Source of the DNA: Selaginella moellendorffii
Lineage: Eukaryota; Plantae; Lycopodiophyta
Direction: 5' to 3'
NCBI RefSeq assembly: GCF_000143415.4
Contig: NW_003314290.1
Coordinates: 1,664,454-1,728,453 of the forward strand
Length of the DNA stretch: 64,000 nucleotides
Shown here one piece after another: positions 58,919 to 64,000 of this stretch. The translations under genes and the position numbers were made by a program. The first letter of the stretch is position 1, and the number at the start of each line of letters is the position of its first letter. Under the pieces are notes generated by a model. The model was not told the origin of the DNA and made no database searches. It saw only the letters and a list, made by a program, of their open reading frames with translations.

Positions 58919-60826
58919 TCATAGACGAGTGGATCCAGGTAGTCGGAAGCTGAGGCTTCTGGAGCTACCATCACTTGAAGGTGGTGGCAAGTCAAGAACG
59001 TCTATGTTACCTTCGAGCATATCCAGGACGTTTCTCATAGAGGGGCGGATTGCTGCCTCGGGTTGGATGCACCACAGTCCGATTTTCACGTACCTCTCGG
59101 CATCCTTGAGCTCCAAGCCACTGCTAGTGCTGGCGAAATCGTCGTCCAGGAGCTTCTCGTCAATAAGCTCGACGACGTTGCCACTGTGAAACATGCTCAG
59201 CGCGGTTTCGCCCAGGAAGCGCGGTTGTGAGGAGGATGAGGAGGAAGAGGAGGATGGAGGATGGAACTGGACGGTGCGCTTGGAGCTGACGAGCTCGAGC
59301 AGCACGATTCCAAAGCTGTAGACATCGGTCTTGTCCGTGACTTTGGTGTGGAGCCACTCGGGTGCCATGTATCCGGGAGTTCCTCGCATGACAGTCACCA
59401 CCTGGCTCTTTCCCCGCTCGGCGAGCTTGCTCAGGCCAAAGTCGGAAATTCTGGCTCGTAAGTTCTCGTCCAGGAGGATATTTTGAGGCTTGATATCCAG
59501 GTGAAGAACTTGCTCCCGGCATCCTTCGTGGAGGTATGTGAGTCCTCGAGCAACATCTAACGCGATTAAGTGTCTCTGGTTCCAGTTTAACAGCAGATTT
59601 GCTGATCCGCCACCTTTGTCATCATCGTTCTTGGTGAAGATCCACTTGTCCAGTGATCCATTGGGCATGAACTCGTAGACAAGCAATGCGGCTGGTCCCT
59701 GAATGCAAAATCCTCGAAGCTTTACCAGGTTGAAGTGGTGAATGCTGCCAATGGACATAACCTCGGCCTTGAACTGCGAGTGTCCTTTCGACGCGCCTTG
59801 GATCTCTACGTCCATCTTCTTCACAGCAACGAGGCTCCCATCCACAAGCTCTCCTTTGAAGACAGATCCAAATCCTCCAGCTCCAAGTATGAGCTCGGGA
59901 TCAAAGTTTCTAGTTGCCATCTTCAAGTCGTGATAGCTAAACTGGTGCGGAAGTATCTCATCGAGCCTCATTCCTTCGATGAGCACTTGCTTTTCCATGC
60001 GCCTCCTCCGAGATCTTCTCCACTTTCTGGTTGCAACGAAGATTACGACGCTAAGCACCACCCCGGCCACAGCGCTTGCTACCCCAGCGATCACTCCCAG
60101 ATAACTCTTTTTGCTTCGAATGAACTGTGGAAGATTACTATCAGTGACACTCCAAGTGACATTTCTCAAGATTCCAATGCCTGGATCATACCCAAGCTGC
60201 CTCCACACTTGCTCGTTCCCAGCCACAGCGTTTGGAGCACAGGGCTCCGTGAACGAATGATCGCTGAGACACCCGTCTGGGGAGTAGCATTGAGCCACCA
60301 TCCTGGCCACCGCAGTCCGTCCATTTGGAGCTAAAACTTGGATGTTTGTCGAGCACAAGCTCCGGTCTTGGCTATACCATCCAGTGGCCAGCGCTGCCAT
60401 GGGTTCCATATTCCATTGCGAGGACGTGCACGGCCTGAGAGACCCCGGATTTGAGAGGTTGAAGCTTGTGACATAGAGGACGGCATTGTTGGTCCCTTGC
60501 AAAGTTGGAGAGCAAGTGAAAGTCCTGTAAGCTAGGCCTGGGACGCAGCAATTCGGGCAGTCTGGAGCGATGGTGGCATTCAAAATGACGCTGGAGAAGG
60601 GCTTGCAAGCTTCGGAATCGCTGAGATATGGCTCGGATTGATTGCTCGATTGGTAGCAGGATGAATTGCGGAGTGAACGGTTGCCGCTGAGCATGGGCTC
60701 CGGGAAACAAAGATATCCATTCGGGCAGTCGCTTGATGAAGAACATACCTGTTGTTGGGCTTGCAAGTGGAAACTCCTGGTGCTACATAACACTATCATG
60801 AAGCACATGAGAAGCGACACCTCCAT
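58919..60826 (-). CDS. Receptor-like kinase with kiwellin (ripening-related, RlpA-like double-psi beta-barrel) ectodomain; intronless
   Basis: Signal peptide; Cys-rich CSSSSDCPNGYLC; CCVPGLAYRTFTCSP...ALATGWY...C...APNGRTAVA...C....GC..DH....PC..N.V....VW..LG...VTWS; TM (GVIAGVASAVAGVVLSVVIFVA) followed by RKWRR; intact kinase (LGAGGFG, VAVK, HLDIKPQN, DFG, GTPGYMAPE). Confidence 0.9.
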   Translation of the reverse strand: MEVSLLMCFMIVLCSTRSFHLQAQQQVCSSSSDCPNGYLCFPEPMLSGNRSLRNSSCYQSSNQSEPYLSDSEACKPFSSVILNATIAPDCPNCCVPGLAYRTFTCSPTLQGTNNAVLYVTSFNLSNPGSLRPCTSSQWNMEPMAALATGWYSQDRSLCSTNIQVLAPNGRTAVARMVAQCYSPDGCLSDHSFTEPCAPNAVAGNEQVWRQLGYDPGIGILRNVTWSVTDSNLPQFIRSKKSYLGVIAGVASAVAGVVLSVVIFVATRKWRRSRRRRMEKQVLIEGMRLDEILPHQFSYHDLKMATRNFDPELILGAGGFGSVFKGELVDGSLVAVKKMDVEIQGASKGHSQFKAEVMSIGSIHHFNLVKLRGFCIQGPAALLVYEFMPNGSLDKWIFTKNDDDKGGGSANLLLNWNQRHLIALDVARGLTYLHEGCREQVLHLDIKPQNILLDENLRARISDFGLSKLAERGKSQVVTVMRGTPGYMAPEWLHTKVTDKTDVYSFGIVLLELVSSKRTVQFHPPSSSSSSSSSQPRFLGETALSMFHSGNVVELIDEKLLDDDFASTSSGLELKDAERYVKIGLWCIQPEAAIRPSMRNVLDMLEGNIDVLDLPPPSSDGSSRSLSFRLPGSTRL

Positions 60827-61116
60827 AGTTTAGTAAATACCACTGTTCTTGGGCACCTGGAAACCACAGAAAATCACGAGATCGTGTCTCTCTTGTTGTT
60901 TCGGCCCACAGACTTAAAGTTTGGCAGCTGGCTGCAGGTATCTTTCAGTGTCATGGGCTGGCAGACGAAAAGAGGAATTCCTTCCAGGACCCGCAATGCT
61001 TTAACAAGCAAAAGCTTCGATCTTGACAAGTCTAGCTCCGCATGAGACCGCAAAAGACTTCGACTTTTTCTAGAGCTTTAAACCAGTTTACCCGCGAGAG
61101 GTTTGCAATTCCAGCC

Positions 61117-62884
61117 ATGGATCATCGCAGCACTTTCTTCGCGCTCGCGATGATCTCACTCGCCAGCGCCACCGCGCAGCATTTCTCCTCCTCTTGCGGC
61201 GCCAGATGCGACGATTGTTCTGGCGGTCTCGTTTGCAATCCTGTTAGCAAGACCTGCGATGGTGATCCAGGAGCTAACACCCTTTCCTGCCCAATTCCCG
61301 GCTGCGAGCCCGCGCAGACCTTCGTCTACTCGAATGCCACCGCCCTCAATCCCGAGTACTGCGTCGGCAACTACACCTATCAGCTCTTCAATTGCTCGCC
61401 TAAAGAGCAGTCTCTCAACTTCGCGGCTTTATACTACATCGAGCTGGAGGGGCTTCCCACGGCATGCAATCGGTCCACGCCCTACAAGAACTCGGAGCTC
61501 CTGGCAAATATGGCCACCGGATGGTTTGCCAGTGGATCCTCGTGCTTCAAAGAGATTGCAATCACGGCAGAGAATGGATGAGCGTCACGGCGACGGTGGC
61601 GGACATTTGTGCATCGACGATGGGGTGTAGCCCAGCGACTGGATACTACGAGCCGTGCACGCCCAGATCGCTGAGAGGGACGAGAGGTGTGTGGAAAGCG
61701 ACGTATTTTGATAATGTGTTGCAAGTCACTTGGAAGTGGATTCGAAAAAACGCACTCTTTTCATTGCACTGGTTTCTAGTGGAGCACTCGTTGCCTTGCG
61801 GCGCTCTTAAGGATTTTCTGGTGGAAGGTCGTGAGACTGTCCAATGCCGCCAAGAAGAAGCTCCATCTGGGGGATCGCACGGATGCCCCGCGGCAAATCA
61901 GGTACCAAGAGCTGTATCGAGCGACCAAGGGATTCCAGAGCAAGTGGGAGAGGGAGGGCTTGGGACTGTGTTCAAGGGGACGCTGCCCAGCGGAGAGATT
62001 GTAGCGGTCAAGAGGATTGGCGGTGGATCGCGGCAGGAGGACAAGCAATTTAAGGCGGAGGTGATGTCGATTGGCAGCATCCATCACCTCAATCTCGTCA
62101 AGCTGGATTTTGCCTGCATTCTCCCCACAACTTACTCGTCTACAAGTTCCTCGCCAATAGCTCGCTGGATAGATGGGATTTTGCCAAGGACAAGTACCTG
62201 CCCTGGGCAACCAGGCTTTCCATCGCGCTCGACGTCGCTTGAGGGCTTGCGTATCTCCACGATGGATGCCGCGAGAAGGTACTCCGTCTAGACATCAAGC
62301 CACAGAACATCCTCCTGGACGAGAAGATGAATGCCAAAATTGCCGACTTTGGATTCTCAAAGTTCATTGACAAGGACAAAACGCATGTCGTGACAGTCAT
62401 GCGGGGCACGGTGGGATACATGGCTCCCGAGTGGCTCCACTCTCGTGTCACGGACAAGACGGAAGTCTATAGCTTTGGAATCGTCCTCCTGGAGCTTGTT
62501 TGTAGCATAAAGGCCGTGGAGTGTTCCTTGTACTCGGACTCGCAGATGGACGTTGTGTTCCTCACCCAGACCGCTTTTAACAAGCTCCACAGTGGAAACG
62601 CCAAGGACTTGGTGGACGATCGGCTGCTCAAAGCCGAGGACGGTGGTGGTTTTTTCTTGAGTGGCTTTGAGAACATCCTCCTGATCGGGTTATGGTGTAC
62701 GCAGGAGGATCCCTTGCGGCGACCAACGATGTCTGTGGTGGTGAAGATGCTCGAGGGTGCCATGGATGTGTTGGCGCTCCCTCAGCTGGAGAGACCCGCT
62801 GCACAGGATTCATCGCTCTTGGTGAGCAGCAGCGAGAGCTCGGGAGTGCAGATCTCCATCTCGGTTTTGGACTTGGCTCGCTAA
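61117..62884 (+). pseudogene. Kissper-kiwellin receptor-like kinase, disrupted
   Basis: Signal peptide, kissper-like SSCGARCDDCSGGLVCNPVSKTCDGDPGANTLSC, kiwellin body, TM and kinase. Frameshifts near 61578, 61745, 61798, 61938 and 62105; in-frame TGA at 62240-62242; HLD changed to RLD. Confidence 0.82.
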
Positions 62885-63436
62885 GTAGATTGCTTAATAA
62901 GTTAATCAAAAGGAATGAACTTTCATTTAAGTATATATTTAGAATCCTAATGAGAAACCGGAAGGTCTGGAGGCGGAAGATCTGGAGGAGTTCAGGAAAT
63001 GGCTGAAGAGATCATCAAAACGGCACTTATAAACATGAATGAAACCACTATTTGGGTGATAAAGTTTTTGGCAAAGCGTGAAAGTTTGTACGTCTTTTTA
63101 TGTGCTGAGTCTTTTGGTATACACACACCACACGGCACGGGACGGTAGTTTGAGCACTTCAGTGTTGCTTTGGCAGTCCCTTTCAATGCCAATGGTTTTC
63201 TTGGCTTGGCCTAGAACAGAAAAATTCTTGCAAGAAAGGATGATAGCGATTTGCTTTTGCCAGTCAAAAGCTTTAAGTCTAGCTCGCTTCGCCTGGTCAA
63301 AAACGTCTCTTTATTATTCCAGACGACTCGTACAAGAAAGACCAATGCTCAGGTTGGAAAACCATTTGCTGAGCTTTTTTGTTATGACAACAGACGCGTT
63401 ATACACACATCACACGGCATGGCGATGCGTGGCTCC

Positions 63437-63443
63437 TATAAAA
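63437..63443 (+). promoter_or_regulatory. TATA box of the 3D-domain gene
   Basis: TATAAAA ~60 nt upstream of ATG 63499. Confidence 0.5.
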
Positions 63444-63498
63444 GGTAGAGCTCCGAGGTCATGCAAGAATTATACAGCGAGCAGCGCTGCGTTCATTC

Positions 63499-64000
63499 AT
63501 GGCTAAAAATCATCGATCTTCCGCTTCTCTTGTGCTCTTTCTCTCTTGCATGGCTCTGGGATTCTCAGTGGAGGCAGCCAGAGAGAGTTTCACGTACTAC
63601 TGGACTCCAGAGGAGAGTGATCTATGCGCCAACGAGGCCTCAAACACAGAAATCAAGGATTGCAATGACAACACGATAGCTTCCGTCTGTGGCAGTTTCA
63701 GTTCAAAAATCCATGAGGAGGGTGCTGGAAAGTTGAAGGACGGGCACTACGTGAATTGTCAAGAGAATTGCAACTGCTACTCCGTGACTGATGGTCCCAA
63801 GGGCAGCCGAGATAACGATTTGCATCTTTACGTGTCTATCGCGGTTCCAGATGAAGTGAAGTATCCCTTTGGATCAAAGCTCCAGATAGATCTGCTCCAA
63901 AACTTAGCGCTTCCCAACGGCAGGCAACACAATGGATGTGTTCGGGTGGATGACACGTGTTATGGATGCAACATGGACTTCTACGTGGGATCTGAGAGTA
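63499..64000 (+). CDS. Secreted 3D-domain (MltA-like double-psi beta-barrel) protein; 3' end beyond the window
   Basis: Uninterrupted 167-codon ORF: MAKNHRSSASLVLFLSCMALGFSVEA|ARESFTYYWTPEESD...EEGAGKLKDGHYVNC...GSRDNDLHLYVSIAV...YPFGSKLQIDLLQNLALPNGRQHNGCVRVDDTCYGCNMDFYVG. Confidence 0.75.
   Translation, partial: MAKNHRSSASLVLFLSCMALGFSVEAARESFTYYWTPEESDLCANEASNTEIKDCNDNTIASVCGSFSSKIHEEGAGKLKDGHYVNCQENCNCYSVTDGPKGSRDNDLHLYVSIAVPDEVKYPFGSKLQIDLLQNLALPNGRQHNGCVRVDDTCYGCNMDFYVGSES

What the first reader, a model, noticed from the sequence alone, without database searches (positions are those of the whole stretch)
63499..64000. Secreted microbial-type 3D-domain protein hidden at the window edge: possible horizontal transfer
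Seen: an intronless ORF absent from the ORF track, with TATA box, signal peptide, many Cys and the pattern TYYW..EE..D / EG.G.L.DG..VN / GS..N.L..+.SIA / PFG+KL.I..L....LP.G..HNGCV.VDD / MDFYVG. Established: 3D (three-Asp) domains are MltA-related double-psi barrels linked to peptidoglycan cleavage or binding. From memory this motif set resembles secreted proteins of bacteria and early-diverging fungi rather than seed plants. Inference: an HGT-derived apoplastic protein, possibly antibacterial or glycan-active.
Basis: partly seen in the sequence, partly recalled or inferred. Interest (0 to 1): 0.82.

Follow-up and report, generated by a model that had tools for sequence, protein, structure and literature searches.

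The report
Fungal-type MltA-like secreted protein, Selaginella
The spikemoss Selaginella moellendorffii has an expressed, intronless gene for a small secreted protein built like the bacterial cell-wall-cutting enzyme MltA; among plants relatives turned up only in lycophytes, the rest being in early-diverging fungi, a springtail and predatory soil bacteria, so it was probably gained by horizontal transfer.

Summary
Observation confirmed. An ATG at 63499 opens a frame that runs off the window end. The full gene is a 197-codon intronless ORF ending 92 bases past the window, on a 1.9-Mb Selaginella moellendorffii scaffold among plant genes. RNA-type contigs from four studies cover it but not the upstream spacer.

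Pfam, NCBIfam and PDB do not hit the protein directly. A family profile hits YuiC (3e-6), and 40 of 104 relatives hit Pfam 3D. A confident AF2 model (pLDDT 91) matches MltA best (Z 10.5, against 6.8 or less for expansins and 6.0 for kiwellin).

The catalytic Asp (D160), the substrate-binding Asp (D152) and the orienting Thr (T32) are kept. The first "D" is Pro117, and the D152-D160 loop is shortened and flanked by two cysteines.

Named relatives are mostly Zoopagomycota and Mucoromycota, with chytrids, the springtail Allacma and Myxococcota. The only other plant hit is a divergent copy in the lycophyte Diphasiastrum that lacks the catalytic Asp. Trees place Selaginella in a Zoopagomycota-rich clade (96/95), but AU tests do not reject alternatives.

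Selaginella has three intact copies and one broken copy; older pairs show ω of 0.2-0.3.

Enzyme activity and a defence role remain inference. Earlier scan reports on paralogous loci of this genome reached the same reading.

The parts
63437..63443 (+). TATAAAA box, 56 nt upstream of the ATG
   Evidence: Read in the sequence. RNA-type contigs begin at 63486 and 63491, downstream of it.
63486..64000 (+). Transcribed region: short 5' UTR plus CDS, continuing past the window end
   Evidence: Logan contigs of four runs from four studies lie here and on the neighbouring kinase exons. None lies on the spacer 62957-63424. A GT..AG joint at 62644/62704 in X1 shows that run is RNA.
63499..64000 (+). CDS of the MltA-like/3D-type secreted protein, codons 1-167 of 197. 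The stop codon lies 92 nt beyond the window (L001:6592-6594).
63499..63576 (+). Predicted signal peptide, aa 1-26, with cleavage after V-E-A (inferred)
   Evidence: Hydrophobic core at aa 7-24. The AF2 model has low pLDDT and a lone helix here. Homologues also start with hydrophobic leaders. No dedicated predictor was available.
63589..63603 (+). First barrel strand, FTYYW. T32 (63592-63594) aligns with MltA T99 / YuiC T91, the Thr that orients the catalytic Asp.
   Evidence: Profile alignment to MltA. The role of the Thr is from PMC4499186. T or S occurs in 91 of 104 relatives.
63718..63744 (+). EGAGKLKDG motif of the middle (inserted) subdomain; G75 is nearly invariant
   Evidence: The structural alignment to MltA covers 153 residues, including part of this region.
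63835..63852 (+). SIAVPD, the position of the first '3D' aspartate (MltA D261). Here it is Pro117, followed by Asp118.
   Evidence: Across the family this column is D in 45, N in 44 and P in 3 sequences; the three P are the three Selaginella proteins.
63928..63939 (+). HNGC motif. H144 and G146 are invariant in 104 relatives, and C147 is conserved in 91 of 104.
63952..63954 (+). [quoted passage not shown]
   Evidence: D in 103 of 104 relatives; PMC4499186.
63958..63969 (+). Cys154-x-x-Cys157 loop between the second and third Asp. The D-to-D spacing is 8 residues, against the canonical 11.
   Evidence: Paralogue P0002 has a spacing of 15. One RNA contig 99% identical to this gene carries a 21-nt insertion here.
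63976..63978 (+). Asp160, equivalent to the catalytic Asp (MltA D308 / YuiC D162)
   Evidence: D in 95 of 104 relatives; PMC4499186 and PMC10127604.

Best explanation
The gene encodes a 197-aa secreted, disulfide-rich, single-module protein of the MltA/3D (GH102-like) lytic-transglycosylase superfamily. It belongs to a compact subfamily marked by an invariant HNGC motif. That subfamily is common in Zoopagomycota, Mucoromycota and chytrids, and its bacterial kin are in Myxococcota.

Shown here: homology, fold, retention of the catalytic Asp160, the substrate-binding Asp152 and the orienting Thr32, genomic integration among plant genes, transcription, a small gene family, and long-term purifying selection.

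Inferred: after signal-peptide cleavage the protein acts in the apoplast on a beta-1,4-linked GlcNAc-containing glycan, either bacterial peptidoglycan or chitin/chito-oligomers. Asp160 would act as the single acid/base to give 1,6-anhydro products, serving defence or release of microbial-wall fragments.

Also inferred: the gene entered the lycophyte lineage by horizontal transfer from a zygomycete-grade fungus or a shared microbial source. This happened long ago, because paralogue dS reaches about 1 and a divergent copy exists in Diphasiastrum.
For: - ORF and full gene.
- Expression: contigs of four studies lie on the gene and on neighbouring exons, none lies on the spacer, and a spliced joint is seen next door.
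- Family: 451 relatives, the best being Entomophthora at 1e-34. Pfam 3D hits 40 of 104 relatives. The profile hits YuiC at 3e-6 and MltA at 0.05.
- Fold: AF2 pLDDT 91.2, pTM 0.82. The top 14 Foldseek hits are all MltA-type enzymes. VIA Z is 10.5 with 153 residues aligned to MltA and 8.1 to YuiC, against 6.8 or less for expansins and 6.0 for kiwellin. Atlas gives TM 0.78-0.79 to Mucoromycota and Myxococcota 3D clusters.
- Residues: T32, D152 and D160 map to MltA T99, D297 and D308.
- Substrate precedent: YuiC degrades peptidoglycan and converts penta-GlcNAc to a 1,6-anhydro product. A secreted MltA-like enzyme is used by Bdellovibrio against prey. Some fungal relatives carry LysM/CBM50.
- Distribution: no other plant was found except one Diphasiastrum copy.
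- Tree: Selaginella sits in a 96/95-supported clade with Conidiobolus, Neoconidiobolus, Entomophthora, Dimargaris, Tieghemiomyces and Allacma.
- Host integration: flanked by topoisomerase I and kiwellin-RLK genes on a 1.9-Mb scaffold; the paralogues also lie among plant genes.
- Selection: ω is 0.19-0.33 for the old pairs.
Against: - Pfam 3D, NCBIfam and PDB do not hit the protein itself.
- The first '3D' Asp is Pro117.
- The loop that contacts the -1 sugar in MltA and YuiC is 3 residues shorter and bracketed by two Cys. It also varies in length between paralogues and alleles. Substrate or activity may therefore differ or be lost.
- The recent pair P0001/P0002 has ω of about 1, one copy is broken, and the Diphasiastrum copy lacks the catalytic Asp.
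- AU tests do not reject a position outside all other eukaryotic sequences (p 0.12-0.13), so donor and direction are unresolved.
- No activity, localisation or induction data exist.
- Large HGT screens whose tables I could not read may already list the gene.
Confidence: 0.72

Rival explanations
1. The fold and origin are the same, but the plant protein no longer cleaves glycans. It would act as a glycan-binding or wall-loosening protein (expansin- or lectin-like), or as a decoy or ligand within the kiwellin-RLK cluster.
For: Pro replaces the first Asp, and the -1 subsite loop is shortened, Cys-bracketed and length-variable. The recent duplicates have ω of about 1. The Diphasiastrum homologue lost both the catalytic Asp and the Thr yet keeps an open 197-aa ORF. 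Three of the four Selaginella copies lie beside kiwellin-ectodomain kinases.
Against: D160, D152 and T32 are kept in all three intact Selaginella copies. D160 corresponds to the single residue essential in MltA and Bd3285. In this subfamily the first Asp is already N in 44 of 104 sequences, so it may be dispensable.
Confidence: 0.3
2. The gene was acquired directly from bacteria (for example Myxococcota), independently of the fungal genes, rather than from a fungus.
For: Myxococcota encode the nearest bacterial relatives. The AU test does not reject Selaginella on the bacterial side of the split (p 0.12-0.13).
Against: The best scores go to Entomophthoromycotina. The ML trees put Selaginella inside a 96/95 clade of Zoopagomycota plus Allacma. 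Selaginella shares HNGC (N, not the D typical of the myxobacterial rows) and the DDxCxxC loop with Conidiobolus, Piptocephalis and Allacma sequences.
Confidence: 0.12
3. It is an ancient eukaryotic gene inherited vertically and lost in nearly all other plants and most eukaryotes.
For: Two deeply diverged lycophyte families have copies, and a lycophyte clade is not rejected (AU p 0.42). A position outside fungi is not rejected either.
Against: No homologue was seen in any alga, bryophyte, fern or seed plant among about 15 billion proteins. This would require many independent losses. The genes are intronless in both lycophytes. The tree places them within a fungal subclade.
Confidence: 0.07
4. 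It is contaminating fungal or bacterial DNA in the assembly, or a diverged plant DPBB protein such as a kiwellin, barwin or expansin.
For: The neighbours encode kiwellin domains, which are also DPBB folds. The Diphasiastrum copy sits on an unplaced scaffold.
Against: The gene lies inside a 1.9-Mb scaffold between topoisomerase I, receptor kinases and other plant genes. Paralogues lie on three more scaffolds. It is transcribed in four independent studies. Structural Z is 10.5 to MltA against 6.0 to kiwellin, and sequence relatives are all MltA/3D-type.
Confidence: 0.02

Closest known systems
MltA, membrane-bound lytic murein transglycosylase A (E. coli; PDB 2ae0, 2pi8; CAZy GH102 from my own knowledge)
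   Same: It is the best structural match (Z 10.5, 153 residues aligned). Both have a double-psi beta-barrel built from an N-terminal T-x-Y-Y strand and a C-terminal 3D segment, with an inserted subdomain. The catalytic Asp, the substrate-binding Asp and the orienting Thr align.
   Different: The plant protein is half the size, with a much reduced inserted domain. It has a eukaryotic signal peptide rather than a lipobox, and 10 Cys in the mature part. The first Asp is Pro. It has an HNGC motif and a shortened D-to-D loop. Sequence identity is only 16-19%, and Pfam MltA/3D models do not hit it.
YuiC / Sps stationary-phase survival proteins (Bacillus subtilis; PDB 4wjt, 4wli, 4wlk)
   Same: It is the best sequence-profile match in the PDB (3e-6) and a minimal secreted MltA-type domain. 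It shows that such a stripped-down barrel cleaves peptidoglycan and GlcNAc oligomers to 1,6-anhydro products.
   Different: YuiC lacks the middle subdomain and the 12-residue hairpin that carries HNGC. It has all three Asp and no disulfides.
Uncharacterised '3D domain-containing proteins' of Zoopagomycota, Mucoromycota and chytrids (for example Conidiobolus coronatus KXN72822.1, Entomophthora muscae KAJ9077750.1)
   Same: They share the subfamily: 30-38% identity over the whole mature protein, the same length, signal peptide, HNGC motif and conserved Cys55/93/147/190. Predicted structures superpose at 1.9 A.
   Different: Most fungal members have the canonical 11-residue D-to-D spacing and D or N at the first Asp position. 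None is functionally characterised in any paper I could find.
Bd3285, the secreted MltA-like lytic transglycosylase of Bdellovibrio bacteriovorus
   Same: It is a precedent for an MltA-type enzyme exported to attack another organism's wall. Its function depends on the third Asp.
   Different: It is a bacterial lipoprotein with a long disordered N-terminus. It was not shown to be a close relative here.
Plant DPBB proteins: kiwellin, barwin, expansins
   Same: They share the double-psi beta-barrel core and are secreted and Cys-rich. Kiwellin domains are encoded in the neighbouring receptor kinases.
   Different: Structural scores are clearly lower (Z 6.0-6.8, about 85 residues). There is no sequence relationship and the active-site motifs differ.

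Membership tests
Pfam 3D domain (PF06725) / MltA-type lytic transglycosylase superfamily | A significant match to the family model | tested here: inconclusive
   The protein itself has no Pfam hit at E<=1. However, 40 of 104 homologues hit PF06725 (best 1.7e-15), and the family profile hits YuiC at 3e-6 and MltA at 0.05. Membership is therefore transitive.
Pfam 3D domain (PF06725) / MltA-type lytic transglycosylase superfamily | MltA-type double-psi beta-barrel fold | tested here: met
   AF2 model pLDDT 91.2. Foldseek probability 1.0 to MltA entries. VIA Z 9.2-10.5 to six MltA structures and 8.1 to YuiC, above every other fold class.
Pfam 3D domain (PF06725) / MltA-type lytic transglycosylase superfamily | Third Asp, the catalytic carboxylate (MltA D308 / YuiC D162) | tested here: met
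   Asp160 is in the aligned column, which holds D in 95 of 104 relatives.
Pfam 3D domain (PF06725) / MltA-type lytic transglycosylase superfamily | Second Asp, the substrate N-acetyl contact (MltA D297 / YuiC D151) | tested here: met
   Asp152 is in the aligned column, which holds D in 103 of 104 relatives.
Pfam 3D domain (PF06725) / MltA-type lytic transglycosylase superfamily | First Asp (MltA D261 / YuiC D129) | tested here: not met
   Pro117 occupies the aligned column, with Asp118 next to it. The subfamily has D in 45, N in 44 and P in 3 sequences at this column.
Pfam 3D domain (PF06725) / MltA-type lytic transglycosylase superfamily | Thr that orients the catalytic Asp (MltA T99 / YuiC T91) | tested here: met
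   Thr32 lies in the FTYYW strand.
Pfam 3D domain (PF06725) / MltA-type lytic transglycosylase superfamily | Lytic transglycosylase activity (1,6-anhydro product) | not testable with these tools
   This needs biochemistry.
Horizontally acquired gene in a plant | Absent from the recipient's relatives (patchy distribution) | tested here: met
   Word and exhaustive searches of 5.8 billion clusters and 1.84 billion representatives found plant members only in Selaginella moellendorffii and Diphasiastrum complanatum. Unannotated plant genomes could not be searched.
Horizontally acquired gene in a plant | Nested within the donor clade with statistical support | tested here: inconclusive
   The ML tree gives a 96/95 clade with Zoopagomycota and Allacma. 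The AU test gives p 0.12-0.13 for the alternative outside all other eukaryotes.
Horizontally acquired gene in a plant | Truly integrated in the host genome and expressed, not contamination | tested here: met
   The gene is flanked by plant genes on a 1.9-Mb scaffold, and paralogues lie on three other scaffolds. RNA-type contigs come from four studies.

The most novel reading that the evidence does not exclude
A lycophyte ancestor captured a zygomycete-type secreted lytic transglycosylase and kept it for hundreds of millions of years as an apoplastic enzyme. It would cut bacterial peptidoglycan or fungal chitin into 1,6-anhydro fragments. This would be the first lytic transglycosylase of a plant. 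In Selaginella it is embedded in, and diversifies together with, arrays of kiwellin-ectodomain receptor kinases. Its hypervariable active-site loop would then reflect an arms race with microbes.
Probability: 0.2. Interest if true: 0.75.

Novelty: new member of a known kind. Interest (0 to 1): 0.55.

Why it matters
I know of no lytic transglycosylase described from plants; plants are known to attack microbial walls with lysozymes, chitinases and glucanases. An expressed, selectively maintained MltA-type gene in lycophytes would add an enzyme class to plant-microbe biology. It would also be a clean case of cross-kingdom gene gain in an early vascular plant lineage. In addition, it gives a route to characterising a large fungal family of the same proteins, for which I found no functional study. 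The claim is easy to test with recombinant protein.

Tried and rejected
- Direct family scans of the protein (Pfam, NCBIfam) and a single-sequence PDB search gave nothing, or only chance hits to procerain and rubredoxin.
- The search for related loci failed twice with alignments that were too diverse. It worked with three myxobacterial-type sequences.
- Giant-virus vector idea. One long-branch metagenomic relative (P0144) groups with Selaginella and lies on a contig with chlorovirus-like genes. Three scans of IMG/VR found no viral relative. Removing P0144 did not change the placement. I dropped the idea as unsupported.
- Kiwellin, barwin or expansin origin: rejected on structural scores and sequence relatives.
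- Contamination: rejected for Selaginella.
- Literature searches for the locus tags, for eukaryotic 3D/MltA proteins and for plant HGT lists found no report of this gene. The Ma et al. 2022 HGT survey is not in the library, so prior listing there cannot be excluded.

Full report
**The observation**

An ATG at 63499 opens a frame of 167 codons that has no stop before the window ends. The mechanical ORF list omits it only because it runs off the source. A TATAAAA box sits at 63437-63443. The N-terminus looks like a eukaryotic signal peptide, with a basic start, a hydrophobic core at aa 7-24 and V-E-A before residue 27.

A word search found the complete product, a 197-aa protein (P0001). It is encoded without introns on Selaginella moellendorffii scaffold GL377594.1 (1.9 Mb). 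The gene ends 92 nt beyond the window. Upstream neighbours are a topoisomerase I gene, a kiwellin-ectodomain receptor kinase and another kinase gene, so this is plant DNA and not a contaminant.

**Expression**

I laid Logan contigs of four runs from four different studies on 60500-64000. They cover the gene from 63486/63491 onward and cover the exons of the upstream kinase gene. No contig lies on the intergenic 62957-63424. One run shows a GT..AG joint at 62644/62704. The runs are therefore RNA-derived and the gene is transcribed. Contigs cannot give expression levels or exact transcript ends.

**What the protein is**

Pfam, NCBIfam and a single-sequence PDB search gave no real hit. An exhaustive HMMER search with the three Selaginella paralogues found 451 relatives at E<=1e-3. 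After the Selaginella clusters, the best was Entomophthora muscae (1e-34), followed by Conidiobolus and Neoconidiobolus proteins.

I aligned 104 relatives (A2).
- Forty of them hit Pfam 3D, PF06725 (best 1.7e-15).
- The A2 profile hits the Bacillus MltA-like enzyme YuiC at 3e-6 and E. coli MltA at 0.05.

An AlphaFold2 model built on A2 is confident (pLDDT 91.2, pTM 0.82).
- Its 14 best Foldseek matches are all MltA-type enzymes, with probability 0.99-1.0.
- With VIA-align, MltA gives Z 10.5 with 153 aligned residues, and YuiC gives Z 8.1.
- Expansins give 6.8 or less, and kiwellin gives 6.0.
- In the ESM Atlas the model superposes at 1.9-2.0 A (TM 0.78-0.79) on a Mucoromycota cluster and on a Myxococcota cluster in which every member carries Pfam 3D. 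The feature search gave the same leads.

So the protein is a compact member of the MltA/3D superfamily. It is not a kiwellin- or expansin-type plant barrel.

**Active site**

From the profile alignments and the YuiC paper (PMC4499186), the residues map as follows.

| Selaginella residue | Equivalent in MltA / YuiC | Role | Conservation in 104 relatives |
|---|---|---|---|
| Thr32 | T99 / T91 | Orients the catalytic carboxylate | T or S in 91 |
| Asp160 | D308 / D162 | Catalytic | D in 95 |
| Pro117 (then Asp118) | D261 / D129 | First of the three Asp | D in 45, N in 44, P in 3 (all Selaginella) |

The loop between the second and third Asp contacts the -1 sugar in MltA and YuiC. Here it is 8 residues instead of 11 and is bracketed by Cys154 and Cys157. 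Paralogue P0002 has 15 residues at this point.

One RNA contig that is about 99% identical to the window gene carries a 21-nt insertion exactly there. The loop therefore varies in length even between near-identical transcripts.

A similar DDxCxxC loop occurs in Conidiobolus, Piptocephalis, Allacma and several metagenomic sequences. His144 and Gly146 of an HNGC motif are invariant in the subfamily. Cys55, Cys93, Cys147 and Cys190 are conserved family-wide, while six further Cys are lineage-specific.

**Distribution**

Named relatives fall into these groups:
- Mucoromycota: many Mucorales, Endogonales, Rhizophagus, Umbelopsis and Bifiguratus.
- Zoopagomycota: Basidiobolus, Conidiobolus, Neoconidiobolus, Entomophthora, Dimargaris, Tieghemiomyces and Piptocephalis.
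- Chytrid-grade fungi: Nowakowskiella and Hyaloraphidium.
- The springtail Allacma fusca.
- One unnamed EukProt entry.
- Myxococcota as the nearest bacterial kin: Enhygromyxa, Kofleriaceae and Myxococcales MAGs.

Among plants, the word search with the Selaginella protein found only S. moellendorffii.

The last cluster look-up showed that one representative (P0059) comes from the lycophyte Diphasiastrum complanatum.
- Its whole homology region is a single 197-aa ORF.
- It lies on a 65-kb unplaced scaffold that is gene-poor, has 38% GC and carries LTR-retroelement fragments.
- A partial second copy lies 3 kb upstream.
- The annotated spliced tail looks like an artefact.
- This copy has lost the Thr and the catalytic Asp, with Asp at the Thr32 position and Gln at the Asp160 position.
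- It has no close relative in the word search.

**Phylogeny**

I built an ML tree (LG+C20 PMSF, 176 columns) of 106 sequences. It separates the bacterial rows (plus Piptocephalis) from the other eukaryotic rows, and the three Selaginella proteins form a clade with 99/92 support. Their apparent sister was a long-branch metagenomic sequence, P0144, from a contig with chlorovirus-like genes.

Without P0144, the Selaginella clade sits in a clade supported at 96/95. That clade contains Conidiobolus, Neoconidiobolus, Entomophthora, Dimargaris, Tieghemiomyces, Allacma and the Diphasiastrum sequence. It is apart from the Mucoromycota, Basidiobolus and Rhizophagus clades.

The AU tests give three results:
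- They do not reject a tree with Selaginella outside all other eukaryotic rows (p 0.127 and 0.124).
- They do not reject a Selaginella plus Diphasiastrum clade (p 0.417, delta lnL 2.8).
- So a zygomycete-grade source and a single ancient lycophyte acquisition are the best-fitting readings, but neither is proven.

**Gene family in Selaginella**

| Copy | Locus | State | Neighbours |
|---|---|---|---|
| P0001 | L001 (this window) | Intact, intronless | Kiwellin-ectodomain receptor kinase array |
| P0002 | L011 | Intact, intronless | Kiwellin-ectodomain receptor kinase array |
| P0003 | L012 | Intact, intronless | F-box, fibrillin and HEATR1 genes |
| P0004 | L013 | Broken | Kiwellin-ectodomain receptor kinase array |

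The broken copy has a frameshift after about residue 97 and a deletion that removes the PFG motif. Its annotated model splices over the damage.

dN/dS results:
- For the old pairs, ω is 0.19-0.33 at dS 0.8-1.3. This indicates long residence and purifying selection.
- For the young pair P0001/P0002, ω is about 1.0-1.3 at dS 0.1. This is compatible with relaxed or diversifying selection.

**Mechanism**

The mechanism I commit to is a secreted MltA-type glycan-cleaving enzyme. It would act on peptidoglycan or chitin-like GlcNAc polymers, with Asp160 as the single catalytic acid/base, and would function in the apoplast.

Precedents support this. YuiC, a minimal version of this fold, degrades peptidoglycan and turns penta-GlcNAc into a 1,6-anhydro product. 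Bdellovibrio exports an MltA-like enzyme against prey, and its function depends on the equivalent Asp. Some fungal relatives are fused to LysM/CBM50 modules.

My confidence by step:
- Homology and fold: about 0.95.
- Non-vertical origin: about 0.8.
- Retained catalysis: about 0.5.
- A defence role: about 0.35.

The main mechanistic rival is a non-catalytic glycan-binding or signalling role. The Pro117 substitution, the remodelled loop and the catalytically dead Diphasiastrum copy all point that way.

**Prior knowledge**

I found no paper that describes this gene or a eukaryotic MltA/3D family. UniProt and JGI merely label some fungal members as "3D domain-containing". Earlier reports of this scan on paralogous loci of the same genome reached the same reading. 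One of them stated that no other plant has the family, and the Diphasiastrum copy found here qualifies that statement.

Noticed in passing
window 63953-63959 (in contig record 8 of run X1): An RNA-type contig with only 4 mismatches to the window gene over 515 nt carries 21 extra bases, in frame, in the loop between Asp152 and Asp160. The insertion resembles the longer loop of paralogue P0002. It is either a loop-length allele of this gene or a chimeric unitig.
   Followed up: partly
L013:6001-6620 (GL377627.1): This is a fourth Selaginella copy of the gene, and it is broken. It has a frameshift after about residue 97 and a deletion that removes the PFG motif. The annotated 132-aa model (SELMODRAFT_423500) splices over the damage.
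   Followed up: yes
L001, L011 and L013 (window 58919-63032 and the paralogous loci): Three of the four copies lie next to kiwellin-ectodomain (Pfam KWL1) receptor-kinase genes. The block topoisomerase fragment / KWL1 kinase / MltA-like gene has been duplicated and rearranged, with flanks 85-95% identical.
   Followed up: partly
L014:10001-10594 and L014:7007-7253 (Diphasiastrum complanatum MU832886.1): A lycophyte homologue is encoded as a single 197-aa ORF that lacks the catalytic Asp and the orienting Thr. A partial second copy lies 3 kb upstream. The 228-aa annotated model adds two tiny distant exons that look artefactual. The scaffold is unplaced.
   Followed up: partly
L010:5001-5606 (JGI metagenome 3300009469, contig Ga0127401_1000269): A short, long-branch relative that lacks the middle subdomain lies on an 11-kb densely packed contig. 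Faint PBCV1_P7 and TBP hits and a Polysacc_lyase_14 gene suggest a giant virus. No relative was found in IMG/VR.
   Followed up: partly
window 63118-63140 and 63400-63422: There is a 23-nt direct repeat (TATACACACAYCACACGGCAYGG, 91% identical), with the two copies 282 nt apart in the promoter-proximal spacer. The second copy ends 15 nt before the TATA box. A tandem 15-mer lies at 62959-62988.
   Followed up: no
P0026, P0232, P0237 (Allacma fusca): The springtail Allacma fusca has at least three genes of this family, one of them on a 99-kb contig. They group with Zoopagomycota and Selaginella in the tree, so this may be a second animal-side transfer or fungal DNA in that assembly.
   Followed up: no
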